A program made the translations under genes and the position numbers. Shown piece after piece: positions 23,766-54,414 of a stretch of 64,000 bases of DNA (within the stretch, counting starts at the first letter, position 1; each line of letters begins with the position of its first letter). The DNA lies in NCBI RefSeq assembly GCF_036321535.1, contig NC_087450.1:9238001-9302000 (forward strand). The letters run 5' to 3'. The DNA is from Camelus dromedarius. Its lineage: Eukaryota. The notes under the pieces were generated by a model. It searched no databases and was not told the DNA's origin. It saw nothing but the letters and a program-made list of their open reading frames with translations.

Positions 23766-26700
23766 TCACATGCTGCTGAATCTCAGGATCTCAGCGAGGT
23801 CATAGCCAGTCACAGCAAAGGAGCTGCCCGAGGGGTCACAGAATCGGGCACCACACACCTGGGTGTCCGGCACACACGCACCATGACAGTGTTCCACCTA
23901 GGGGAGAGGAGGGCTGCTCAGGGCCTGCGGCCTCACGCTTGGGCCCGCACTCCGCTCCTCTCACAACACACACCTCAATGTAGCCACTCTCTGGGCTTCT
24001 GCTCAGCTTCCAGATGTGTACAAAGGTGTCTTCAGCCGCAGAGAGTAGCTATAAAAAAAAACAAAAAACACAGGGAGGACCAGTGGGAGTCGGAACACGC
24101 TGACAGGTGACTGATACAGGCTGCACCCAACCCAGGCGCCCGGAGAGGGGGCTACACTGAGTGGCAGAGATAAGCCTGTGGACTTCCTCTGAATATTCCA
24201 GCACCAGGAACAAGGTTATAGAGGGATGGAGGAGACTGACCTTGCCCACGTCGGGAGCCAGGTCCAGGGCACAGACGGCCCGGGCGTGCGCGTTGATCTG
24301 GACGTGCAGAGTTCCTGTACTGGCTTCGTACAGACGCACCTGCCCATCCCCATAGCCTGCTGCTATGGTCCCCTGCCACAGCTGCACGGAAGGGCACGGG
24401 ACCCTGCAAGGGTGATACCCCACTTTGATTTCCCAGACCCGGGCCCACTCCCACCCTGAAGCTACCTCAGGAAGGCCTCAGCCCCCTTCTGCCTCACCTA
24501 CCCAAATCCTGGAATTCGGGTCAGTAATTTGAATTCAGGCCCTGACCGCCAGACACACAGCAAGCCTGAGTCATCAGCTGTCACCATGTCAGCCACGCAG
24601 TCCTGAGGGGAAAGGCAGGATCAGCCCTTCCCTTTCTCCCCTGCTGGGTCCTGTACACGGGGCAGGAGGGGAAGGGAGGCAGAATTCGCATCTTTGCCTC
24701 TCCGGGGAAAGGGCAAGGTGCGGAGCCCTCGCTGGCAGCTGGAGGCTCCCCTCAGGAAGCATAAAACACTTTCCTTGTATTCCCTAGAGAGTCTTACTCC
24801 CCACCCCGGACTGAACACACACGCCAGGCGTTAGGAGAGGGGATATAATCGTCCTCACTGGATGGATGATGAAACAGGCCACAGTGTCATGACCTTCTGG
24901 AGGTCTTGAAGTGAGACACTCAGAGTCATGACTAGACTCTGGGCATCCTGAGAGCCCCTAACCCCAAGCAGCAGACACAGCCCACGGGCCCAGCTCTGTG
25001 GCAGGTGCAGCGCAGGATGCAAATTAGAAGATACATACCCTGTTCCCAAGACGCTTAAGACCCAGCTGGGGAGACAGGACTTGTCTCTGAGGGCAGTATC
25101 AATTCAAGGCTCAGCTGAGGGAGACCAGTGGGAGCTGGAATAGGGGGGTGGCTTCCTGAGGTGGCACTGGGGGTGGCCTGAAGAGGCAGGACTCGCCCAG
25201 GTTCAGAGAAGGAAGCTACACATGTCAGAGCTGGAAAGCATCTCAGAAACTATCTGCCCCAACTCTTCAGTTCACACCAGCACTGTAAAGTGTTGGAAAA
25301 CGACTAAATGCCATGTAAATGGAAAGTAACCCTGGCGCTGTCACTGGATCTGAGGTTGCTGAAGCCTAGGAGAGTCTAGCGATTTGCCTAAAGTCATCCA
25401 GCTGCTTGAACCCAGCTCTCCTGCCTCCCAAGGCGGGGAAGGCCCCCAGACTCACTGGAACAGGTAGGCGAAGTCCACTTACCTGGCCCTGGGCGGGCTC
25501 GGTGGCAATGTCTGTGACTGGTGTCTGGTGTCCAGCCAGCTCTTCACTCAGAACGATGTGGGGACCCTTGGCTGGGATGTCAAACACCAGTACCCGGCCT
25601 GACCACGCTCCTGCAGAAGCAGTGCTCCACTGATGGCTTCCTGATCCTCCCAGGTCCCCAGCCCCCACACTCAGCACTTCCTCCATCCCAGAGACCTTAG
25701 TAACAAACCCACCTCTCATTGCTCCAACCAGCCTTGCCCCCATATTCACCACCCTTATCCTATCCCACCCTGCCCCTCTGAACCCCTCCACGGCTTTTTG
25801 GAGTCTTCAGACCCCCCTTCACTCCCACCCTTCCCTCTAACCCTCCAGTTTCCTCAGATCAGCATCTTCCTGGCCAAAGCACACACCCCTATGCCCCAGC
25901 ACCCCACAATGCCCTGCCCTCGGCCCCCTCACCCACACAGATGAAGTGACCACTGGCAGCAATTCCTCGGGCAAACACAGCCTGTACTAAGTATGAGAGG
26001 GGAAAACTATTAGAAATAGCATCTCCCCATCCCCACAAACACTCCCTACCCCTGCCCCACGCAGTCCCACAGGTACCTAGAGAGGCATCTCCAGAGTCCA
26101 GTGCGTGCCAATAGACCATGACGGAGCCATCAGACTCGTACATCTGGAAGACGGGGTGAGAATGTCACAACTCAGCTGACCTTTGCTGAGCTCTGTGCTG
26201 ACTACTCCACGTACTCATGTTAGCCTTAGCCCAATTAATCCTGAAAACCACCCTGGGAGGTCGGCATTACTTTTATCCCCATTTTACAGAGGAGGACACT
26301 GAGGCTCTGAGAAGTCAAATTACCCAAGGACATGCGGCTAGTAAAGAAGCAGATATTGGAGATGGCACCTGAGAACTGAAAAACAGGGAAGGAGAGAAGA
26401 TGAGAAACAAGGAGGAGGGGGCTAAGCACATCAAAAGTTTGGAAATGCTTAGAGGTAAATGGGGGAAAGGTCTAGGGGCCTTGGGGAGAAGTTGAGAACA
26501 CTCTAGTTGGGGAGGGCAGGAAGGTCCTCTTCTTTCTTACCTGTATTCCTCGATGTGAGGCGAGTACCAGCAATACTCGGTCAGGGAGGACACACCAGTG
26601 GACCTGGAGGGCGGTGAGTCAGAGCAGGGAGAAATGGTCAGAACAAGGGACACGAGGACTCACAAGTGTGGAAATTCAGAGGGCTAGACAAGGCCTCTTC

Positions 26701-26987
26701 CTCGGGATTTGGTGAGGAACGGCTGGGCGAGGGCTGGTTTCAGCAGCACCGCTCCCAACGCCATAGCTCACCTGGGTGATAAGTGGGGAACTCACGCCAG
26801 CGCCCTCCTTAGCGTGGAGCTGGCGCTGGGCCAAGGGCACCCCCTCAGGAGCAGCGCTGAGAAGCTGGGCGCTGGGTCCATGGACTACGCCAAAATGTGT
26901 GAGGTTGCGCTGCTGCAGCACACTGAGGTTGTTGCACAGGGCGGCCGCCGAGCCTCGAAGGGGAATGGAGCGCTCCCGGCGGAACAT
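23766..26987 (-). CDS. WDR54: WD repeat-containing protein 54, 332 aa
   Basis: Coding exons 26987-26772, 26603-26541, 26143-26077, 25986-25933, 25610-25483, 24602-24502, 24403-24241, 24048-23974, 23897-23766. GT/AG junctions and phases are consistent. The translation MFRRERSIPLRGSAAALCNNLSVLQ...VHWCVLP...AVTGYDLAEILRFSSM* matches WDR54. Confidence 0.96.
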
Positions 26988-27596: not shown

Positions 27597-31551
<3,955 letters not shown>

Positions 31552-31597
31552 ACCTCAGGCAGTGGGAATCCCGCCTACTTTCTGTCTGTCTGCCAGA

Positions 31598-31603
31598 AAT
31601 AAA
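31598..31603 (+). terminator. AATAAA polyadenylation signal of C2orf81
   Basis: Canonical hexamer ~46 nt after the ancestral stop codon. Confidence 0.65.
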
Positions 31604-32290
31604 CACCTGAGTTGCTTTAAGAATTGGCCCCATGTCTGTCAGTTTCTTCCAAGTGTGTGTTCTCACCGAACTGGAGAGGAGCAGTTGTCCTGCAGGCCTA
31701 GAAGATAGAACGCTGACTCCGGGAATAAGTGCATTACCACCCTTAGGAGACCCCGCTTTAGGGCCAAAGTGACTCCCCAGCAGAGACTGTCTGGAGAGCC
31801 ATCTGTCTGTCCACAAAGGAGCAGATGTAAGAGTTGCGAGTGGGGATCTGTCTCAGTTTGGAGACTTCATCGAGTCTCATTCCAGTAGGGGAGGAAGGGA
31901 TGGCCCTGCTTACGCACAGAGTGATTCAAGACATGAGGAATTTGATTTCCAGTCCCTGGGTCTCTGTCAGTTCACCTTAGAGCACAAATCCAAGTTATAT
32001 GTGGAGACAAATCTGAGCCTATGCAGGGCTCAGGGCTGTCCCAGCTCTCTTGATCTTTGACATGGGCCAGCATTGGAGTGAGGCAACCAGGTCACTTGGA
32101 AAAACAATTTAAGGAGGAACTCACTCTCAGGTTCAAATGAGGTGTTCCAACACATCTAAGAGGGAATGCCTCCTTAAATTTCGTGTCTGCTCCACACCAA
32201 CCTCTTGGTTAGTCCCTATTTAGCTTTGGCTAGTCCGTCCCCACCTTCTTTGTGGGCAAAGCTTCCACTGACAGGCCACCATTCTCTGCT

Positions 32291-35200
32291 ATGTCACTGT
32301 GGTTTCTACTCAGCACCCCAGTCTGGGGTCCCGGCTCCGTCCTCCTCACGGTGGTCCTCCTGCTTAGACTAAGTGTGTGTATCTGGCATAAGTGTTATCT
32401 CTGGGACCTCCAGCACTGCTCCACAGACCTGACCGGGAAGACGGCAGTGGTGACTGGGGCCAACAGTGGTGAGTACTCATCCTGCCCTATCACCTCACAT
32501 GGGCCACAGCCTCCAACAGCCCCAACAGGGAGGGCAGAGAGGAGGATCAGCACCCACTGTCACACCTTTGTCTCTCCCCTTGCTCCGTTGCCCTCTCTGC
32601 ACTCCTTGCACTACCCTTCTCTGAAGCTGCCCTCCCACAGGCATTGGGAAGAGCGTGTCCCAGGAGCTGGCCCGCCGCGGGGCGCGTGTGATCCTGGCCT
32701 GCCGCAGCCGTGAGCGTGGGCAGCAAGCCCTGGCCGAGATACGAGCAGCCTCAAAGAGCAACCAGCTCCTGCTTGGTGAGGTGGACATTAGCTCGATGGC
32801 CTCCATCCGGAGCTTTGCTCAGTGGCTTCTGCGCGAGCATCCAGAGATACACCTACTGGTTAACAATGCTGCAGTCTGCGGTGTGTGTCTTGACTTACTT
32901 CCCCTAAACACATTTCAGGAGCCTCCTTTCTGGCTCAGGGACCCCAAAACAGGCAGCCCCAAGCCTAACCTGTATATCCTGTGGAAACACTCTTAATTCG
33001 GACACTGTCCTATTGGACACTGAAGCTACCTTAAGTTGTAGCTTCACACTTCACTGCCCCGATGTTGACACATACATGCTCCTGTGGCTTTTCTACTGAA
33101 CCCTCATATATCCTCCCCAGACATCATCTCCCTCAGGACTATCATTTCATCACCCACCACCTATGTTTTCATCTCCTCCCAGGATTGCCCACAACACGTA
33201 CCCCAGAGGGCCTTGATGTCACCTTTGCCACCAACTACACTGGACCCTTTCTGCTCACAAATCTGCTCCAAGGTAAGGAAGGATGGGTGCTTATTGTCTG
33301 TGCTGCCCCTGTGTCTTCATTCCTCTGGCATTTTCATGTCTTACTGCCTCCCATGGTCCCCAGATGCTTGCTGAACGATGCCCCAGTACACTTTTGCTGG
33401 ATACAGCAGGGGAACCCACTTGGCACCAGCCAGGTTTAGGAGGCTGGTAATGGAATCAGTCAGCCCCAAATACAAGCAACAGGAAGGTGTAAGATCTATA
33501 CAGGCCGCCTCCCCGTCCCCCAGGTCTGAGTACTAGCCTGACCAGGAGTCACTCATCTCAACAAAAGCTTTCTGAAGTCACTAGGCTGCTAGGATTAAGG
33601 ACGTTCTTCCTGGGGAGGTGGGGCTGGGTGGCAGGCACATCCTCCCTAACAGTGTTTTCTAGATGGTCTAATGACCTCTTAAAAAGCAAATTAATTTTTG
33701 GCCAGGTAATACACTTCCAAAGTACAAAATCGAAAGTGTTGAAGTATACAGAAGGATATACAGAAAAAAAAAGAAAAAAAGGAAGAAAAGGAAGTCTCTT
33801 CTCCTTGAAAAGCAGCTCCCCATCCCCCTCCTGGGGGGCAGCTGCCATTGCCAGGGTCTCATGTTCCCTTTAGCGGGCAATTAAAGTAACCCAACGGGAA
33901 AGTGCAGAAAGGTCAAACTCAATGCATCTGCAAGTATAAAAGTTTTTTCCCCCTTTCCAAAAAGAGTGATATGCTACAACAACCTATGTGTACTTTGCTT
34001 AATAATAGTTCCTTAAACTGTCTTCTCTCCTGTCTTCCCTCCTGCCACTAAATCACCGTTCATCATACCACTGTCTTGCTTCAGGTCCTTTGAAGGTAGT
34101 CTATGCTTTATAAATATAAAACCTAAGCTGCTTCTCTCCACTTACGAGTCCCTCTGCAGACTGAGAGCCTCACCGTTGCCTTTCCCAGACTTACACTCTT
34201 GTCACCAGCCAGCCAATCTGTATCTCTTGGACCACACTCTTTTTTAAATTCTGGCTGCGCTTTTGCACATCTGTTTCCCTTTATCTGGAATATCCCTTCC
34301 CATCCCTTTAAGGCAGAGTAGCTTTAGCTCAGCTGCCAGCACTCAGCACAGATCCCGCTTGTGCTGTGGACTCTGCCCTGACCCCTCTGCCTCCCCAGCT
34401 GCCCCCATTTCCAGGGCTCCCTTCGCCCCTGTGCCCGTCTCTGTTCCTGCACTGACGCTGCTGCGTGAAGATCAGCCTCCAACTCGGCCGTGAGCCCCTG
34501 TCACTGTGTCTGCAAGTTTGGGGTTCATTGTCCTCTTTAAGAATAATTTTCTCTCCAACAACTTTTGGCTAGATACCTCCTGCTCAACTTTTCATTTGTG
34601 ATTCTTCCTTTAAATGTAGGCTCAAGACAGTTTTAGCATTTTGAAACAACAGGCAAACTCATATGTGACAGCTAGTATTTTTCATACTTTATATAATCCA
34701 GACATTTTTTTAATACAGTTACGTACTCTTTTTTCTTTTTCTTTTTTTTAAATTTAACTTGTTCTCTTGAGAGTAATTATACTTTCCTTTTTTTTTTGAA
34801 GGTAGTTTAAAAAATTTTAAAGCCCCACTTTTCCAGGTATCTCTGCATACGGTTCTTGTCCCCTAAACTTAGCACCCATATGTCCTTAGCACGGAGTTTG
34901 TGTCTGCCATAGTCCAGGGGCCTAATGGATAGTCGTGCAATGAATAAGCAAGTGACTGAATCTATGAATGTGTGAAAGACAGCTTTCACAGCGTTTCCAG
35001 TCTCTCCTTCCCCCACTTAGCCCTCAGTGAGATAAAAATATGAACCAGGATCAATTACCTCCAGCTGGCAGGTGGAAGAAGAGCAAGGCAAAACCCCACT
35101 TTTATTTTAGGCAAAGAAACCAAAAAACTCCCACAAAGACCAAAAAACAAAACCCCCAAACAAAACAAAAGACACACTGAAATACAACAAGAGGAAAAGC

Positions 35201-36500
35201 GTGAGGAAAGCAGCTGGAACGGAAACGCAGCCTCGGTCACACCCAGCTCCCCCGCGCCTCACCTGGGCGCCTGCGCGGGGGGCCGCGCTCCCCCGGGGGG
35301 TTAATGGAGAAGCAGGCCGGGGGGGGGACGGGCGGGCGTGGGCGCGAACTCCCGGCCTTGCCCTGAGAGTGTGTGGCCCTCTCTCCTCCCAGGGGCCCTA
35401 CAACGGGCGGGGGCAGCCCGAGTGGTCAACGTGTCTTCCTTCAGGCAAGAGAAAGGGTACATTGACGAGGAGCACCTGACAGGGGCTGGTAGACCTTTGA
35501 CCTTCAACCAGAACTATGACTGCAGCAAACTGCTTTTGGCCTCATTCACTGGGAAGCTTGCCCAGAGACTTCAAGGGACAGGTAATTGCCTCTGGCAGCC
35601 CCTGCTCCTCCACTCCCAGGGCTTCCTCCCAGTCCTTCACATCTCATCGCAGTATGTTTTGATCATGAAATATTCCCAGTGTCCCCCGAGCCAGCTGTTA
35701 ACCTCCACCCTTTGTCATCTGTGCGCCCTCTATTTCTCTCAACCCTATCTTCACGTCTCCCCTTCAACCCTTTTTCCAACTCTCATCACCCACAACTCCC
35801 TCTCCTCCCAGTATTTTCCAGTAGCAACACCATCCATCGTGTTCCCCCCAAAGTTCACCCCGCACTTTCAAATACTTGAGTCCGCTTCCTGGCTCGGATA
35901 TCGCCATTCATGTGAGTTATAGAACCCTGACTTCAGGCACCACCTCGAGTGTCTGGTCACCTCCACTGGGCAGGGCTGGTAGGGCCCTCCCCTCTTTGCA
36001 CATCCTAGAGCCATGTTTAACCCTTTCCTCCTCTCACTGTGCTTTCCACTACGGTTGTCTCTCCCTCTCTCAGGTGTGACTGTGAACTCCGTGGACCCTG
36101 GCGTTGTGTACACGGAGATCATGAAGAATTTCTCTTGGTTATATCGTTTCATCTTCTGGCTCCTCAGCTTCTTCTTCAAGGTGGGTGGGGAGGAGCTGGC
36201 TCTGCCTGAAGGGATTGGGGCAGGGGGTCTGCTGCTCAGTGTGTCCCTTCAGGCTACAGCCTGCCTGGCTTTTAATCCTCCTCCTCCTCCCCCACCCCCG
36301 TGTCTCCGCAGAACAGCAAACAGGGTGCAGTCCCAGTGCTCTACCTGAGCTTGGCAAAGGAGCTAGATGGCATTTCTGGAAAACATTTTAGCAGTTCCGG
36401 TGTGATAACTCTTGCCCCTAAAGCTGCCCGAGATCCTCACGTGGCCCAAAGCCTCTGGGATACTTCAGCCCGACTAACAAATCTAGACAAGATGGACTGA
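32291..36500 (+). CDS. Unnamed classical short-chain dehydrogenase/reductase (RDH11/12/13/14-DHRS13-like), 330 aa, intact
   Basis: Exons 32291-32468, 32641-32880, 33183-33272, 35393-35581, 36074-36180, 36312-36500 total 993 nt. All GT/AG, phases 1,1,1,1,0, no stops. Motifs: hydrophobic N-terminal anchor, TGANSGIG, ACRSR, NNAA, TNY, VNVSS, YDCSK (35515-35529), DPGVVYT. Confidence 0.92.
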
Positions 36501-36699
36501 CCTCTGTGACCCCTGCCCTGACTCGCCGCCTTCCCCCTGACTCCCAGCCCTCACTCGGATTTTGCGTTCTGCTTGTCAGTTCCAAGGAACAATCAGTCAC
36601 CTTGTTGGGTGTAATGACCACTTCCTCTTCCTGTTGGCTCCACGCATGAGAGCTCAGCTTAGCCTGGGGACAGCTCCAGCTTCTACTTTATAGCCATTT

Positions 36700-36990
36700 C
36701 TCAGATGGAAGTGTTCATCTCTTGGGCACTAGGATCTCCAAACCTACCGAGCCCCGTGTTCTGGTGACGGGGGAGTAAAGGTCCTTCCGGTGGTCTATTA
36801 GGGTTCCTGGCTTTGTGGGAGGCAGCACCACATAGTGTCCTCTGGCCCAAGGCATATACCACACGGCTGCAGGACAGCACCCCAGCTGCACAGGGTGTTG
36901 TCTCCCAGCTGGTACAGTAACTGCCCGGGTAATGGTTCCATCTTTCTATCAGACCAGCTGCTCCTGGATGCTGAGTCATGTGATAAGGCA
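36700..36990 (-). mobile_element. ERVL internal (integrase C-terminal) fragment
   Basis: Minus-strand translation HPGAAGLIERWN...VVYALGQR..CGA resembles ERVL integrase (HHPEAAGLIERWNG...AVYALNQRP.YGA), with frameshifts. Confidence 0.75.
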
Positions 36991-37052
36991 GGTGAATTCT
37001 CAGAGTGAGAGCCCACTACTTCTTTTCTGGGGTCTTTGTTCACCAGTAGAAG

Positions 37053-37143
37053 TTTTTTGTTTTTTTAATGGTGGTGCTGGGTATTGAACCTAGGACCTCG
37101 TGCATGCTGAGCATGCTGTCTGCCACTGAGCTGTACCCTCCCC
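37053..37143 (-). mobile_element. Vic-1-like camelid tRNA-derived SINE
   Basis: Reverse complement GGGGAGGGTACAGCTCAGTGGCAGACAGCATGCTCAGCATGCACGAGGTCCTAGGTTCAATACCCAGCACCACC plus an A-rich tail. A and B boxes are visible. Confidence 0.8.
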
Positions 37144-38628
37144 TCATCAACATAAATTTTGGAATCAGCTTTTCAAATTTCACACAAACAAGTCCTTTGG
37201 GGATTTTGCTACATCTACTTGGCAGGATTGATATTTTTATGATAATGTGTTGCCCTAAACATGAACAAGGTGTACTTATATCTATTTAAATCTTATTAAT
37301 ACCTTCATAAAATTTTGAATAATTTTATCCATAAAGATCGTGCGTAAGTCTTACTATAATTCCAGGTTCCCTGCTTTTTAGGCTATTGGAAGTGGTATTT
37401 TAAAATTCGTATATTAATCATATATCAAACAACTTAATTAATTTCTCTAATTCTAATAAGTTATCTGTAGATTCTTTTGGTTTTTCCACATAGAACATCC
37501 CACCATGTAGTGATGATAACAGATTTATTTCTTCCCTTTCAACTATTATGAATCTTGTTTCTTTTCCCAGACCTTAATTGATTTTCTAGTATTAAACCAA
37601 ACTTGCTTTTAAACCAACTTGGTCAGAGTATTACTTTCATATACATTGCTAAATTTAGTATGCTCGTGTTTTGGTTTGGAACTTTTTACTACATTCATAA
37701 ATGAGACTGGCCTTTACTGCCCTTTCCCTTACTTGTATTACCATTGTCTGGTTTTGCTGTCACGGATATATTCATTTTGTAAAATGAATTTGGGATTTGT
37801 GTTCATCCAGGGATATCATGTGAGAAGTAAATGTCAATTAATTGAGGATTAAATATGTACAAGAAACTTGACAGGGGAAATAGCTGTGAGGGAAAATGGG
37901 GAAGAAGCTGGGAGAAGCTGGGAGAAGCTGGGAGATCCACCAGACTGTGAGACAAGGCTGACCCTGAGTGAAGGAGAGAAGGTTGGAAGGAGCTTCTTAG
38001 GGTGCGGTGTGGTAATTTTTCCATTTTAAACCTCCCGCTCTCGTTTTGAAAGTATGCAGTCTATTTCTGCTCTTTATTGGTTAGTCTAAAATTTTTAACC
38101 TGTATGTTTAATTTAACAGTGTTGTTAATGAACATCTTTATTTTTCTTTAAAACGATACATAGATCTTAGAATTCTTCAACATTAATCATTCCCTTTGAA
38201 TTTGTATACTTTTGTAACCCGATATTTTAATTTATTATTTCATTAATTTCACAAATCAGGTATTTTGTTATTTTCAATAATTTTGGTTTTAATTTTCAAT
38301 AAGAAAATTGATATTTTTATCAGTTGATATTTGCGTTGACTTACCCATATGTTTCATATTTCCTCTGCTCGCTCGCCTTTTTTATGTCTCAGAGCTTCTA
38401 TCTGTTATTATTTTCCTACTGTCTTGAAGCATATGCTTTAGAGGTTCCTCTGATGGGGATTCGTGGTAGACAGACTTCTAGGTGGCTCCCAAGGTCCCCA
38501 CCCCCTTGTGTGCACATTCTCCACAGTCTTCTCCTCCTGAGTGTGCGGAGACTCCTGAACACGATGGCAGTGCACTCCTGCGATTATGTTATGTATCTGC
38601 TGATGTAGTGAGAGCCAGAACCATTTGG

Positions 38629-38629
<1 letters not shown>

Positions 38630-38669
<40 letters not shown>
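38630..38669. repeat. (TG)20 microsatellite
   Basis: Perfect dinucleotide run, seen directly. Confidence 0.95.
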
Positions 38670-38673
<4 letters not shown>

Positions 38674-38789
38674 AACATTTTTTCATGTCTACCAGTTTTC
38701 TTCACCTCTTTCAGTTACATGTTTCTGTGTTTGAGTTCCTCAAAGATTTCCAAGGTTTGTGTCATTAATTAATTTATCCATTTAATCAA

Positions 38790-39330
38790 TAAGCCATTTG
38801 CAGCAACATGGATGAACCTGGAGATCATCATTCTAAGTGAAGTAAGCCAGAAAGTGAAAGAAAAATACCATACGATATCACTCATATGTGGAATCTAAAA
38901 AAAAGAAAAAAGGGGACACTAATGAAATCATCTACATAACAGAAACAGACTCGAAGACATAGTGAACAATATTAGGGTTACAGAGCTTAGGGGAAAGGGG
39001 TGGGAAGTAATAAATTTGGGAGTTTGAGATTTGCAAATGATAACCACTATATATAAAAATGGGTAAGAAATATCTTCTGTATAGCACAGGGAACTATATT
39101 CAACATCTTGTAATAACTTTTATGAAAAAGAATATGAAAACAAATATATGTATATATATGCATGACTGGGACATTATGCTGTATACTAGAAATTGATCCA
39201 TTATAATTGAGTATACATCAATAATTTAAAAAAAGCAGCAGTTGTAACAAAATGAAGATGAATCTGTGCCCTTCACCCACAATAAAATACCCATCAATTC
39301 TTGTAAATAAATAAATAAATAAATAAATGT
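38790..39330 (+). mobile_element. 5'-truncated lineage-specific L1 3' end
   Basis: gccatttgcagcaacatggatgaacctggagatcatcattctaagtgaag...ctgtatagcacagggaactatattc...(TAAA)n. Confidence 0.85.
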
Positions 39331-41239
39331 ATGTGTTTGTGGCGTGTCAGCTGATCAAGACATTGTTCTATATGTTACTGTCCTACAGTGATGGATAAAA
39401 CAGCCAAGTATCCATGAAGTCAACGGCGTACATTCTAGCGGAGTGAGAGACATAATAAACACAAATATGTTGTAAGATTCCATAGGCGTGAGTGCTGTGG
39501 ACACAAAAGAAGCAAGAAAGGAAAGAGGGAGTGCCATGATGAGGGGCTGGGGTTGAAATTTTAAATAGGTTGGCCAGGTAAAGACTCAAGAAACCAATTG
39601 GCTTTGAGTTAATCAAAGGGAAGGGTATTTCGGGTGGACCGGACCTAATCAGGTGAGCCCTTTAAAAGCGTTCAGGCTTCCTCAGAAGTCGGAGAGTCTC
39701 CTGTTCACCTTGAAGAAGCACACTGCCCCGTTGTTGAGCAGCCACGGGGCCTCTAGCAGTTGAGGCTTCAGTTCTGCGGTTGCAAGGAGCAGAATTATGT
39801 CAGTAACTGGTGAGCTTGGAAGAGGACTAGGAGCCCAGGTGAGACTGCAGCCCTGAACGACACCTGGATTTCAGCCTGGTGAGATCCTGAGCAGAGGACC
39901 CAGCTAACCTGTACCCAGACTCCCGACCCATAGAAACCGTGAGACAACACATGTTTTCTTTTAAGCCACTGAGGTTGTAATCATTTCTTATCCAGAAACA
40001 GGTCACAAATACAGCATCTAGTAATAGCAAACTGCTTCAGTTTTATTTGTTTGAAAATGTCTTTATTTTGCCCTCATTTTTTAAGAATCATTTTGCTAGC
40101 TAAAGTTGACAGTTATCGTCTCTTATTCAGTTGAAGATAATATTTTTTGTCTCTGGCTCTCATCGTTGCTGTTGAGAAATCAGATACTAATGTAACAGTT
40201 ACTTTGTGGTGAATCTGCTCTCTTGTTCCTTTTCTATACTTTAAATCCCCTTTTCTGTTTTTAAAAATTAGTGAAACATATTCACTTTATGTACTGTAAC
40301 AACATTCCAATATCAGTCATCTTCGCAGGTTTGGATAGTTTATGGTGGCTTGTTTCTTTGTGTGTTTAGTGACTTTGTGCCCTCATGGTACTTGGAGGTT
40401 TAGCTCTAGGAATGATTAGATTCCTAGGATTAAGCTACTTTCCCCAGAGAGAGTTTGCATTTACTTTGGCCAGGTTTCCAGGAGTGCTGTACTGACTTGG
40501 AGCACTTTAACTGACATTTTTGTCTTGGAATTTTTTGGCCACTCACATGGTATACATTCTGCCCCCAAATTTATGTGAGTACAAACTTATTATTTGGAAT
40601 TATAAGTGAGGACTTCCCCCACCCTGCTACACCCAGAACTACGGATGAGGTGAGCTTCTACCCTCACCGTTTCCCTCTGCAGGGCCCTTTTTCTGTCTGA
40701 AGTTCACTCTCTGGGGGGAGTTACTCTTTGAGAAGCCAGGCTTTACTTTATGTGTATGGGGAATAGTTTTTCATGCCAACCTTCTCTGCTCAACCCCAGA
40801 TTTTGTCTCCTGCCCCTGTTTATGGCCTTGTAAGCCCTGGTTTCAGGCCCCCAGGGGCTGGCTTCACAAATCCTGGCTCTAGCTGTCACCTGTGCCTTGG
40901 GAATCATAATTTCATATTTTCTCTCGCTTCTGAGGATTTCCCTTCCTTTCCCACCAGTTCATTCAGACAACACAAATAAACAGGTGTGTGTGTGTGTGTG
41001 TGTGTGTGTGAGAAGCGTTGCATCCAGCGTTTATGGCTGCGCTGCATCAGGGGCGGTCTCTCTGATACTTAGTCCTCTGTGGTGCCAGGAATGGGAGCGT
41101 CCAATGTTTGTCTTACTTTCTCCTTCCTTCTCTCTTTCTTTCTTTTGCATTTGGATAATCAATTGTCCTGGCACTATTTGTTGAATAGTGTGTCCTTTCC
41201 ACACTGATTAATAATGTAAATTTTGTCACATCAGAATTT

Positions 41240-53104: not shown

Positions 53105-53807
53105 TCACAGGCCCCCTGCCCGCCCCAGTGCCTCAGAGACCTGAGCAGAGGGGAGGCGGTAGGTAAACTGGATGCAAGGGAGAGCGACTAGCCTGTAGAT
53201 CATGGAGAAGAAGAACTGGCCCGTCTTCTGGAAGCCCACGCGCTGGTAGAGGGCCAGGGCGGAGTACTGCAGCGCACTGGTGCTGAGGACCACTTCACGG
53301 TAGCCCTGGTCCCGTGCGAACTGCAGGACCGCCCTGACCAGTGCTTTCGCGATCCCCTGACCGCGGTGCTCCGAGGCCCCACAGGTGAAACAGCTCCAAC
53401 TGCTCCTTTCGCACGGCGTGCTTCTTGACAGGCAGTGCTCCCACCATGCCCACCACCTGCCCCTCGGACTCCGCCACCCAGAAGCAGGAGCCACTCTCAC
53501 TGAAGTAGGATTTGCTGATGTCAGACATGTCTGTGTGCAAAGACATGACTTTACACTGGATCCAAGGGTATTTGGCAAGGAACCTCAGGGCAGCTAGGAG
53601 GCCGAGGCTGGCCACGAGGGCCAGGACCCAGGCGCCAGAGACCAGGAATAGGGCGAAGGGCCCTCCAAGCAAGAGCACAAGGGTTCGGGGCAGCTTCAGG
53701 ATGTGGCGGAAGGCAGTGGGGGTGTGCTCAGTCATCCCTTCGGAGAACAAGGCCACGACCCGTTTGCGGTCACTTTCCCTGTATTTGCGGATGTGGTAAG
53801 GAGCCAT
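53105..53807 (-). pseudogene. NAT8/camello-family N-acetyltransferase with a single frameshift (pseudogene or assembly error)
   Basis: ATG 53807: MAPYHIRKYRESDRKRVVALFSEGM...LPRTLVLLLGGP...[35 protein letters not shown]...LELFHL. The frame then shifts at 53381-53378, where 4 nt stand in place of 6. The other frame continues [26 protein letters not shown]...[12 protein letters not shown]...* at 53105. Confidence 0.88.
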
Positions 53808-54414
53808 GGGAGGCTTCTGTGTCTGAATCTCGAAGTTCAGGAGGAGAGCCAGGCTTCCCTGTACACCTTCCCAGCAGCCTTGGGGGAGAGAGAGGAAGCC
53901 AGGTGAGTTGCCCCATCCTCCCACCTCCCAGGAGCGGGCAGCTCTGCTCAAGGATGTGTCTTTCTGCTTCTACCCAAGAGAATGTGGCCACAGCCACTGG
54001 CAGAAGGCGTCCGGTCAGAGAGACCTGCGTTTGATGCCGGCTCTGCGCGCAACCTTGGGTGTGTTACATAATCCCTCTGAGACCCACCTTCTGAAGTTGT
54101 GAGGATTTAATAAAATAACATGTATAAGCTCAAGGCCTCCTCCCCTCCCCTCTGTCCCTTTTTGCTCACTCTCCTCTCAGCTTCTCCACACATGGGGGTG
54201 CAGCATGCTGCAGCCAAGCCTGTCCCCCACCCTTTGGTCCCTCTCCCACGGACTGCACACTGCAAGACTCCTGTGTTTCCAAACACAAGTTTCAGCAAAG
54301 GCTCCTTCCCCCTCGATGGCAAATTTTTAGGCTGTTGAGGTGGCATAAGAGCCAAACACCAAACATGGCCCAGGCCGCACTCAGAGCACTGTCCTTCCAC
54401 CCGCGTCCTCTCAC

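What the first reader, a model, noticed from the sequence alone, without database searches (positions are those of the whole stretch)
32291..36500. Intact, unnamed membrane-anchored retinol-dehydrogenase-like SDR gene
Six exons join into a clean 330-aa ORF: MSLWFLLSTPVWGPGSVLLTVVLLLRLSVCIWHKCYLWDLQHCSTDLTGKTAVVTGANSGIGKSVSQELARRGARVILACRSRERGQQALAEIRAASKSNQLLLGEVDISSMASIRSFAQWLLREHPEIHLLVNNAAVCGLPTTRTPEGLDVTFATNYTGPFLLTNLLQGALQRAGAARVVNVSSFRQEKGYIDEEHLTGAGRPLTFNQNYDCSKLLLASFTGKLAQRLQGTGVTVNSVDPGVVYTEIMKNFSWLYRFIFWLLSFFFKNSKQGAVPVLYLSLAKELDGISGKHFSSSGVITLAPKAARDPHVAQSLWDTSARLTNLDKMD. The N-S-Y-K catalytic tetrad is complete. Basic residues after beta-2 (ACRSR) with no acidic residue there predict NADP(H) preference, so probably a reductase. 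The N-terminal hydrophobic segment predicts ER anchoring as in RDH11/12. Unusual substrate-side residues (NNAA, NYTGPF, SSFRQ) and a second hydrophobic patch (FSWLYRFIFWLLSFFF) set it apart from RDH11-14/DHRS13. I know of no named human or mouse gene between C2orf81 and DCTN1, so this looks like an uncharacterised SDR7C-type enzyme lost in the model species.
Basis: partly seen in the sequence, partly recalled or inferred. Interest (0 to 1): 0.88.

Follow-up and report, generated by a model that had tools for sequence, protein, structure and literature searches.

The report
Conserved unnamed SDR7C reductase gene in camel
This dromedary gene is an intact, selectively constrained member of an old vertebrate family of retinol-dehydrogenase-like enzymes that has no named human or mouse counterpart, appears lost in primates and rodents, and has never been studied biochemically.

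Summary

The window is Camelus dromedarius. The gene is already auto-annotated as "retinol dehydrogenase 12-like", and its fish relatives as "zgc:64106".

It is not an ortholog of any named human SDR:
- It is 30-39% identical to RDH11-14, DHRS13, DHRSX and WWOX, but 88% identical to its ruminant ortholog.
- Its intron phases (1,1,1,1,0) differ from those published for five human SDR7C genes and match a fish zgc:64106-type gene column for column.
- A 100/100 clade joins mammals, sauropsids, amphibians, ray-finned fishes and a skate.

It is under purifying selection: omega 0.37, and 0/993 exon versus 29/3210 intron differences between the two camel species.

No primate, rodent or rabbit protein exists in the database except one colobus model that lacks the catalytic Tyr.

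Not shown: expression in camel (the one read-laying run failed, and RNA-run word shares are not exon-enriched), cofactor, substrate and location. Spliced mRNAs exist in a bat-like mammal and in chicken.

Another reader of this scan had already noted a decayed partial duplicate about 1.7 Mb away.

The parts
32130..32290 (+). Probable 5' UTR, contiguous with exon 1
   Evidence: The 5' UTR of the orthologous mRNA contig L001 (nt 9-155) aligns here without a break.
32291..32468 (+). Exon 1: ATG, N-terminal hydrophobic anchor (residues about 13-31), start of the TGxxxGxG motif; intron phase 1
   Evidence: Kyte-Doolittle 19-residue mean is 1.97. AF2 predicts a helix at residues 2-36.
32641..32880 (+). 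Exon 2: GIGK, beta-2 with invariant R81, the NNAA motif; intron phase 1
32776..32777 (+). Internal GT donor inside exon 2, as used by the predicted 295-aa isoform X2, which drops residues 105-139
   Evidence: P0007 and P0008 join L104 to G140. The sequence G|GTGAGG is read.
33183..33272 (+). Exon 3: catalytic Asn157 within TNYTGPFLLTNLL; intron phase 1
35393..35581 (+). Exon 4: catalytic Ser185 and Tyr211-x-x-x-Lys215; intron phase 1
36074..36180 (+). Exon 5: PG motif and the hydrophobic lid segment (residues 252-267); intron phase 0
   Evidence: Hydropathy is below the transmembrane threshold.
36312..36500 (+). Exon 6: C-terminal helices; stop TGA at 36498-36500
27597..31551 (+). Upstream neighbour: C2orf81 (DUF4639) gene model, degenerate in camels
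   Evidence: L007 gene 5307-9261 gives a 408-aa product with no Pfam hit. Bactrian camel gives 171 aa, against 606-659 aa in ibex, rhinoceros, manatee and otter.
23766..26987 (-). WDR54, a conserved synteny marker
   Evidence: L007 gene 1476-4697 (-), Pfam WDR54. The same order is seen in ibex, rhinoceros, otter and manatee.

Best explanation
This is a functional gene for a membrane-anchored classical short-chain dehydrogenase/reductase of the SDR7C (RDH11-like) group. It belongs to a separate, ancient jawed-vertebrate orthology group (fish 'zgc:64106', tetrapod 'RDH12-like' LOC genes). That group sits next to C2orf81-WDR54-RTKN in placental mammals and has been lost or inactivated in primates and rodents, probably across Euarchontoglires.

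Shown here: gene structure, motif integrity, fold, paralog status and purifying selection.

Inferred: an N-terminal helix anchors the protein in a membrane, either ER like RDH11/12/14 or mitochondrial like RDH13. The invariant Arg81 after beta-2 and Lys63 in GIGK favour NADP(H). The enzyme would therefore work in cells as a reductase of hydrophobic carbonyls, most plausibly retinaldehyde isomers and medium-chain lipid aldehydes. The Tyr211/Lys215/Ser185/Asn157 tetrad would do the chemistry, and the aromatic lid (residues 252-267) would shape the lipid-facing substrate entrance.
For: - Exact six-exon ORF and adh_short match.
- AF2 model with pLDDT 87; TM-score 0.83-0.88 (by query) and 33-39% identity to RDH11-14 and DHRS13.
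- 330-331-aa orthologs at 70-88% identity in Cetartiodactyla, Perissodactyla, Carnivora, bats, pangolins, Eulipotyphla, Afrotheria and Xenarthra, and about 50-69% in marsupials, monotremes, birds and reptiles.
- A 100/100 clade with amphibians, ray-finned fishes and a skate, separated from rdh14b, DHRS13-like and invertebrate SDR7C by a stem of 0.42.
- Five introns at identical alignment columns and phases in camel and Betta. Published human formulas are 122221, 122222, 0 and 2022 (PMC9859523).
- Cattle have Swiss-Prot RDH12, RDH14 and DHRS13 at 34-38% identity, while the ruminant ortholog is 88% identical.
- Selection: omega 0.37, 2dlnL = 101 against omega = 1; pairwise dN/dS 0.16-0.38; dromedary versus Bactrian 0/993 exon and 29/3210 intron differences; alpaca 12/993 versus 191/3188.
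- Tetrad, glycine motif and R81 kept in 47/47 non-primate orthologs.
- Conserved order RTKN-WDR54-C2orf81-SDR.
- Spliced mRNA contigs in another mammal and in chicken.
- SDR7C enzymes prefer NADP(H) and reduce retinaldehyde (PMC7022914).
Against: - No direct evidence of a mature transcript in camel. The single read-laying run was lost to a filter.
- RNA-labelled runs hold intron 3 as well as they hold the whole gene (0.27-0.55 versus 0.35-0.41), so the signal may be pre-mRNA, DNA or repeats.
- Omega of 0.37 is only moderate constraint. The mammalian stem is long (0.51), and the gene was dispensable in a whole superorder.
- The tree contains rdh14b and DHRS13-like but not bona fide vertebrate RDH11/12/13. 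Exclusion of those rests on identity and intron phases.
- Fish synteny is not shared at 10-kb scale.
- Cofactor, substrate and location are untested.
Confidence: 0.72

Rival explanations
1. It is simply the camel ortholog of a named human SDR (RDH12, RDH11 or RDH13), as the automatic names suggest.
For: NCBI and UniProt names such as 'retinol dehydrogenase 12-like', '11-like' and '13-like'. The best Swiss-Prot structural match is mouse RDH12.
Against: Identity to RDH11-14, DHRS13, DHRSX and WWOX is only 30-39%, against 70-88% among true placental orthologs. The intron-phase formula 11110 differs from those of the five human SDR7C genes tabulated, RDH11-14 and DHRS13. Cattle have separate RDH12, RDH14 and DHRS13. 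The locus is RTKN-WDR54-C2orf81.
Confidence: 0.03
2. The open reading frame is intact but the gene is silent or on its way to loss in camels. That would match the decay of its neighbour C2orf81 and the loss in primates and rodents.
For: No exon enrichment in RNA-labelled runs. The upstream C2orf81 model is degenerate in camels. Constraint is only moderate, omega 0.37. A duplicate of exons 1-3 is decaying.
Against: There are no coding differences between the two Camelus species, against 29 in the introns; about 9 would be expected if neutral. Against alpaca there are 4 nonsynonymous and 8 synonymous changes, and exons are five times more conserved than introns. All catalytic residues are intact. 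The decaying duplicate shows what relaxation looks like at this very sequence: about 13 of 17 exon changes alter the protein, and there is a 6-bp deletion.
Confidence: 0.1
3. It is a working SDR7C enzyme, but retinaldehyde is not its physiological substrate. It may act on other isoprenoid or lipid carbonyls (polyprenal/dolichal as DHRSX does, steroids, oxo-eicosanoids), possibly after a functional shift at the base of mammals.
For: There is a long mammalian stem branch (0.51) inside an otherwise slowly evolving clade. It is 30-35% identical to the polyprenol dehydrogenase DHRSX and to WWOX, as well as to the RDHs. The lid and loop residues differ from those of fish and bird orthologs.
Against: The nearest characterised relatives by identity and fold are the retinaldehyde reductases RDH12, RDH11 and RDH13. 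Zebrafish zgc:64106 is expressed in eye tissues, namely cornea endothelium and the ciliary marginal zone (PMC4334901).
Confidence: 0.3

Closest known systems
RDH12 / RDH11 (SDR7C2 / SDR7C1), NADPH-dependent microsomal retinaldehyde reductases
   Same: Same fold (TM-score 0.84-0.88). Shared features are the N-terminal anchor helix, TGANxGIGK, ACR with the NADP-favouring Arg, the N-S-Y-K tetrad and a hydrophobic lid before the FxK-x-x-x-GA segment. Length is similar.
   Different: Only 35-39% identical. Six coding exons with phases 1,1,1,1,0, against seven exons with 122221. GPF replaces GHF after the catalytic Asn, and there is a one-residue insertion before the conserved Cys298. The locus differs. 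No biochemical data exist.
Fish zgc:64106 (UniProt name of the teleost orthologs)
   Same: Same 100/100 clade. The Betta representative has the same five intron positions and phases and the same motifs.
   Different: About 46-48% identical. The fish genes evolve much more slowly (eel to gar 82%). Neighbouring genes differ in Betta. Only an expression pattern in the zebrafish eye is published (PMC4334901).
RDH13, RDH14, DHRS13, DHRSX, WWOX (the other SDR7C-like enzymes)
   Same: Rossmann SDR core, NADP-type Arg and catalytic tetrad. Identity is 30-36%.
   Different: RDH13, RDH14 and DHRS13 have different intron patterns. Teleost rdh14b and DHRS13-like proteins fall outside the clade. WWOX has WW domains.
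Carp RDH13L (Sato et al. 2015, J Biol Chem; cited in PMC7022914 and PMC5133129)
   Same: A fish 'RDH-like' SDR7C enzyme with no identically named mammalian gene. It catalyses 11-cis-retinol/aldehyde redox coupling in cones.
   Different: The literature calls mouse RDH14 its homolog (PMC5443843). Its sequence and paper were not available here, so whether it belongs to this clade is unknown.

Membership tests
Classical SDR (Pfam PF00106 adh_short) | Profile match above the curated cut-off | tested here: met
   121.6 bits against a cut-off of 26.6, residues 50-251.
Classical SDR (Pfam PF00106 adh_short) | TGxxxGxG cofactor motif and NNAG-type motif | tested here: met
   T55-G56-A-N-S-G60-I-G62. 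N134-N135-A136 followed by A or G; NNAA and NNAG alternate among orthologs.
Classical SDR (Pfam PF00106 adh_short) | Catalytic tetrad Asn-Ser-Tyr-Lys | tested here: met
   N157, S185, Y211 and K215, kept in 47/47 non-primate orthologs.
SDR7C (RDH11-like) | Closest similarity to RDH11-14 and DHRS13 in sequence and fold | tested here: met
   The top ten Swiss-Prot structural hits are RDH12, RDH11, RDH13, RDH14 and DHRS13, at 34-39% identity and TM-score 0.84-0.88. Assignment by the SDR-nomenclature HMMs themselves could not be run.
SDR7C (RDH11-like) | NADP(H) preference (basic residue after beta-2, no acidic residue) | tested here: inconclusive
   R81 is invariant across the clade and the outgroups, and K63 is invariant within the clade and in most outgroups (two outgroup rows differ). 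R83 is variable. The sequence rule is met; binding was not measured.
SDR7C (RDH11-like) | N-terminal membrane anchor | tested here: inconclusive
   Hydropathy 1.97 over residues 13-31 and a predicted helix at 2-36. ER versus mitochondrial targeting was not tested.
SDR7C (RDH11-like) | Retinaldehyde reductase activity | not testable with these tools
   Needs an enzyme assay.
Ortholog of a named human SDR (RDH11/12/13/14, DHRS13, DHRSX, WWOX) | Ortholog-level identity to that protein | tested here: not met
   30-39% identity to each, against 70-88% among placental orthologs of this gene.
Ortholog of a named human SDR (RDH11/12/13/14, DHRS13, DHRSX, WWOX) | Same exon-intron pattern | tested here: not met
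   Phases 1,1,1,1,0 over 5 introns, against 122221, 122222, 0 and 2022 for RDH11/12, RDH13, RDH14 and DHRS13 (PMC9859523). No pattern for DHRSX or WWOX was compared.
zgc:64106 / 'RDH12-like' orthology group | Monophyly with fish, amphibian, sauropsid and other mammalian members | tested here: met
   IQ-TREE support 100/100 for 28 rows. FastTree support 97 for the corresponding 26-row clade among 132 rows. The hagfish protein named Zgc:64106 falls outside on a long branch.
zgc:64106 / 'RDH12-like' orthology group | Shared intron positions and phases | tested here: met
   All five junctions fall in identical alignment columns and phases in camel and Betta.
zgc:64106 / 'RDH12-like' orthology group | Shared synteny | tested here: inconclusive
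   RTKN-WDR54-C2orf81-SDR is seen in five placental orders. The Betta neighbours are KIAA1328, an MIP aquaporin, a Nop-domain gene and UBAP2. Only 10-kb flanks were seen.

The most novel reading that the evidence does not exclude
Jawed vertebrates ancestrally carry one more SDR7C enzyme than the human-centred nomenclature lists. After a burst of change at the base of mammals it took on a role different from that of its slowly evolving fish and bird orthologs. It then became dispensable and was lost in the lineage leading to primates and rodents. Retinoid or lipid-aldehyde metabolism in livestock, carnivores, bats and birds would then include an enzyme that human and mouse studies cannot reveal.
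Probability: 0.3. Interest if true: 0.6.

Novelty: new member of a known kind. Interest (0 to 1): 0.45.

Why it matters
The catalogue of retinaldehyde and lipid-aldehyde reductases (RDH11-14, DHRS13, DHRSX) was drawn up from human and mouse. This gene shows that most other vertebrates, including cattle relatives, pigs, carnivores, bats, chicken and teleosts, keep a further constrained paralog that automatic annotation hides under misleading "RDH12-like" names.

It is a clean case of an old enzyme gene lost in primates and rodents. It is also a caution when retinoid-pathway knockouts in mouse are extrapolated to other animals. Function can be tested in chicken, and in zebrafish if zgc:64106 is confirmed as the ortholog.

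It is not a new kind of enzyme, and lineage-specific losses of metabolic paralogs are common. The interest is therefore moderate.

Tried and rejected
No read-level junction evidence in camel was possible.
- **Intron 3 as a control** for the RNA-run word shares was not exon-depleted. The RNA-run listing was therefore dropped as evidence of expression.
- **Naming paralog representatives** with the listing of cluster members used all three calls. It gave rdh14b, DHRS13-like and invertebrate names, but no authentic vertebrate RDH11/12/13 sequence. The formal tree lacks those.
- **rdh14b (a 2R ohnolog, PMC8073704)** as the identity of the gene was rejected. Teleost rdh14b falls outside the clade.
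- **Hagfish 'Zgc:64106'** did not join the clade and sits on a long branch. The origin is stated as jawed vertebrates only.
- **Chicken genomic synteny** was not obtained; only mRNA contigs were returned.
- **P0007 and P0034** were not on record for the look-up of encoding contigs.
- **Solved structures:** there is none for SDR7C. The nearest are protochlorophyllide oxidoreductases and a mycobacterial SDR at 24-28% identity.
- **Literature searches** found no description of this clade. The carp RDH13L paper is not held.
- **Atlas search** added nothing.
Full report
**Observation.** Each intron starts with GT and ends with AG after a pyrimidine tract. Pfam places residues 50-251 in adh_short at E 3.6e-35. 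tblastn finds no second copy in the window.

**Source genome.** The window is 100% identical to Camelus dromedarius chromosome CM070324.1 of assembly GCA_036321535.1. The same protein, letter for letter, is encoded in C. bactrianus.

**What it is related to.**
- A search of 5.8 billion proteins returns 330-331-aa orthologs at 70-88% identity. They come from ruminants, whales, hippo, peccary, warthog, rhinoceros, carnivores, bats, pangolins, moles, hedgehog, manatee, aardvark, tenrec, golden mole, elephant shrew, armadillo, sloth and anteater.
- Marsupials, monotremes, birds, crocodilians and turtles match at about 50-69% (aligned).
- All carry automatic names such as "retinol dehydrogenase 12-like", "11-like" or "13-like".
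- An exhaustive profile search shows a gap below the family. The own 50% cluster scores 552 bits, a caecilian and an eel 291 and 287 bits (47-48% identity), and other single-match, full-length relatives 217 bits or less, mostly around 40% identity or below.
- The eel protein's relatives across ray-finned fishes are 73-88% identical to it. UniProt repeatedly names them "Zgc:64106".

**Is it an ortholog of a named human SDR? No.**
- An AlphaFold2 model (pLDDT 87) was searched against Swiss-Prot structures. It matches RDH12, RDH11, RDH13, RDH14 and DHRS13 with TM-scores (by query) of 0.83-0.88 but only 33-39% identity. DHRSX (polyprenol dehydrogenase) matches at 30-32% and WWOX at about 34-35%.
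- Bos taurus has its own Swiss-Prot RDH12, RDH14 and DHRS13 at 34-38% identity, whereas the ruminant ortholog of this gene is 88% identical.
- The intron phases here are 1,1,1,1,0 over five introns. The published formulas are 122221 for RDH11/12, 122222 for RDH13, 0 for RDH14 and 2022 for DHRS13 (PMC9859523).
- A zgc:64106-type gene of Betta splendens was spliced from its genomic locus. It has five introns at exactly the same alignment columns and phases, with exon lengths 157/240/90/189/110/180.
- An IQ-TREE analysis (LG+C20+F+G4) of 44 proteins gives a 100/100 clade of placentals, marsupials, monotremes, birds, reptiles, amphibians, ray-finned fishes and a skate. Its stem is 0.42 long. It stands apart from teleost rdh14b, fish and ray DHRS13-like proteins, amphioxus and other invertebrate SDR7C proteins (a 132-row FastTree agrees).
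- Inside the clade the branching broadly follows the species tree. The mammalian stem is long (0.51).
- Limits: I could not obtain authentic vertebrate RDH11/12/13 sequences as tool objects, so their exclusion rests on identity and intron pattern rather than on the tree. A hagfish protein named Zgc:64106 did not join the clade.

**Is it under selection? Yes, moderately.**
- I spliced the coding sequences of Bactrian camel, alpaca, ibex, black rhinoceros, sea otter and manatee from their loci. All reproduce the annotated proteins with the same exon lengths, apart from one extra codon in manatee exon 3.
- Pairwise dN/dS is 0.16-0.38.
- A Goldman-Yang codon model gives omega 0.37. Fixing omega at 1 costs 2dlnL = 101, p about 1e-23.
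- Between the two Camelus species the exons show 0/993 differences and the introns 29/3210. Against alpaca the figures are 12/993 and 191/3188.
- The glycine motif, R81, and N157, S185, Y211 and K215 are kept in all 47 non-primate orthologs examined.
- A built-in contrast exists. A partial duplicate holds the 3' part of C2orf81 plus SDR exons 1-3, at 92.7% nucleotide identity, and lies 1.75 Mb away on the same Bactrian chromosome. It carries a 6-bp deletion and 17 exon changes, about 13 of which alter the protein, many at CpG (Arg to His or Cys).
- The annotated dromedary protein P0003 shares these substitutions. Another reader of this scan had noted such an insertion about 1.7 Mb away in this genome.

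**Loss in primates and rodents.** No primate, rodent, lagomorph, tree shrew or colugo protein appears in the camel-based search or in a search started from the one exception. That exception is an Ensembl model from the red colobus, 308 aa long. It has G62R in the glycine motif and R81Q, and it lacks the segment containing Tyr211. It therefore looks like a pseudogene read as a gene. This supports loss or inactivation in the human and mouse lineages at the level of annotated proteins. I could not inspect primate or rodent DNA, so the number and timing of the loss events are open.

**Genomic context.** RTKN, WDR54 (opposite strand), C2orf81 (Pfam DUF4639) and then this gene lie in the same order in dromedary, Bactrian camel, ibex, rhinoceros, sea otter and manatee (RTKN lies beyond the fetched flank in the last three). 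The camel C2orf81 models are short or lack the domain. DCTN1 was not found inside the window, although only ORFs of 90 aa or more were scanned. The downstream feature I could identify is a GNAT/NAT8-like gene split over two frames at 53.1-53.95 kb on the minus strand.

**Expression.**
- Camel expression is not demonstrated.
- RNA-labelled runs that hold 35-41% of the words of the gene hold intron 3 just as well (27-55%). The signal is therefore not exon-enriched.
- Elsewhere there is direct evidence of spliced transcripts. Five public RNA-seq-derived assembly contigs carry the uninterrupted 993-nt ORF of a bat-like ortholog. One of them aligns to the window with breaks at the five junctions and a contiguous 5' UTR.
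- Two chicken contigs carry the chicken ORF.
- Zebrafish zgc:64106 is reported in corneal endothelium and the ciliary marginal zone (PMC4334901).

**Likely mechanism.** The protein has a hydrophobic N-terminal helix (hydropathy 1.97 over residues 13-31; predicted helix 2-36) and a Rossmann core. The Arg after beta-2, invariant in every aligned SDR7C sequence, goes with NADP(H) preference. K63 in GIGK is also kept in most. The tetrad is complete. Characterised SDR7C enzymes prefer NADP(H) and act as retinaldehyde reductases in cells; RDH13 sits in mitochondria and the others in the ER (PMC7022914). The best inference is a membrane-bound NADPH-dependent reductase of hydrophobic aldehydes. Substrate and compartment are unknown.

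The hydrophobic patch at 252-267 is the family's lid segment and falls below the transmembrane threshold. NNAA alternates with NNAG among orthologs. The Gln in SSFRQ is His in most mammals. R83 is variable. The real clade marks are N[Y/H]xGPF instead of NHLGHF, and one extra residue before Cys298.

**Known or new.** The gene is predicted in public annotation. I found no paper that recognises it as a separate vertebrate paralog or reports its loss in primates and rodents. The carp cone enzyme RDH13L is a possible relative that I could not check.

**Verdict.** This is a real, conserved, so far uncharacterised extra member of a well-known enzyme group, of moderate interest.

Noticed in passing
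L006:7614-12845 (C. bactrianus CM109920.1, 66.49 Mb), matching window 29898-35125: A partial duplicate of the C2orf81 3' part plus SDR exons 1-3, at 92.7% nucleotide identity, lies 1.75 Mb from the intact copy. It has a 6-bp deletion and many CpG-type Arg-to-His/Cys changes. Annotated proteins P0086 and P0003 derive from it wholly or in part, and P0003 looks like a chimeric model.
   Followed up: partly
window 27597-31551 (+): The C2orf81 (DUF4639) gene just upstream gives a 408-aa product with no Pfam hit in dromedary and 171 aa in Bactrian camel. Ibex, rhinoceros, manatee and otter give 606-659 aa. It appears degenerate in camels. Fused C2orf81-SDR models (P0074, P0079) exist.
   Followed up: partly
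window 53105-53951 (-): A GNAT/NAT8-like acetyltransferase is split over two overlapping reading frames. The C-terminal part matches Acetyltransf_1 at 5e-11 and the N-terminal part lies in another frame. This is consistent with a frameshift.
   Followed up: partly
window 32776-32777 (+): A strong internal donor (G|GTGAGG) inside exon 2 matches the predicted 295-aa isoform X2 of alpaca and Bactrian camel. That isoform removes residues 105-139, including the NNAA motif, and would be inactive.
   Followed up: no
window 36512-40233 (+): The 3' UTR of the orthologous mRNA (L001) aligns only to 38162-38599 and 39626-40233. The camel 3' UTR region may therefore be interrupted by about 1.6 kb and 1 kb of extra sequence, or may end earlier.
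   Followed up: no
window 33300-35380 (intron 3): RNA-labelled public runs hold 27-55% of the sampled words of this intron, as much as or more than for the whole gene. This could be pre-mRNA, DNA carry-over or repeat-derived words; it is unexplained.
   Followed up: partly
tree, mammalian stem: The branch leading to all mammals is long (0.51 changes per site). Ray-finned fish orthologs are very conserved by comparison (eel to gar 82% identity). This suggests a rate shift or change of role at the base of mammals.
   Followed up: no
P0010 / P0011 (Trichosurus vulpecula): Brushtail possum models of 557 aa fuse this SDR with a domain of the MTHFD type (PF02882). This hints at a different neighbour or a read-through model in marsupials.
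   Followed up: no
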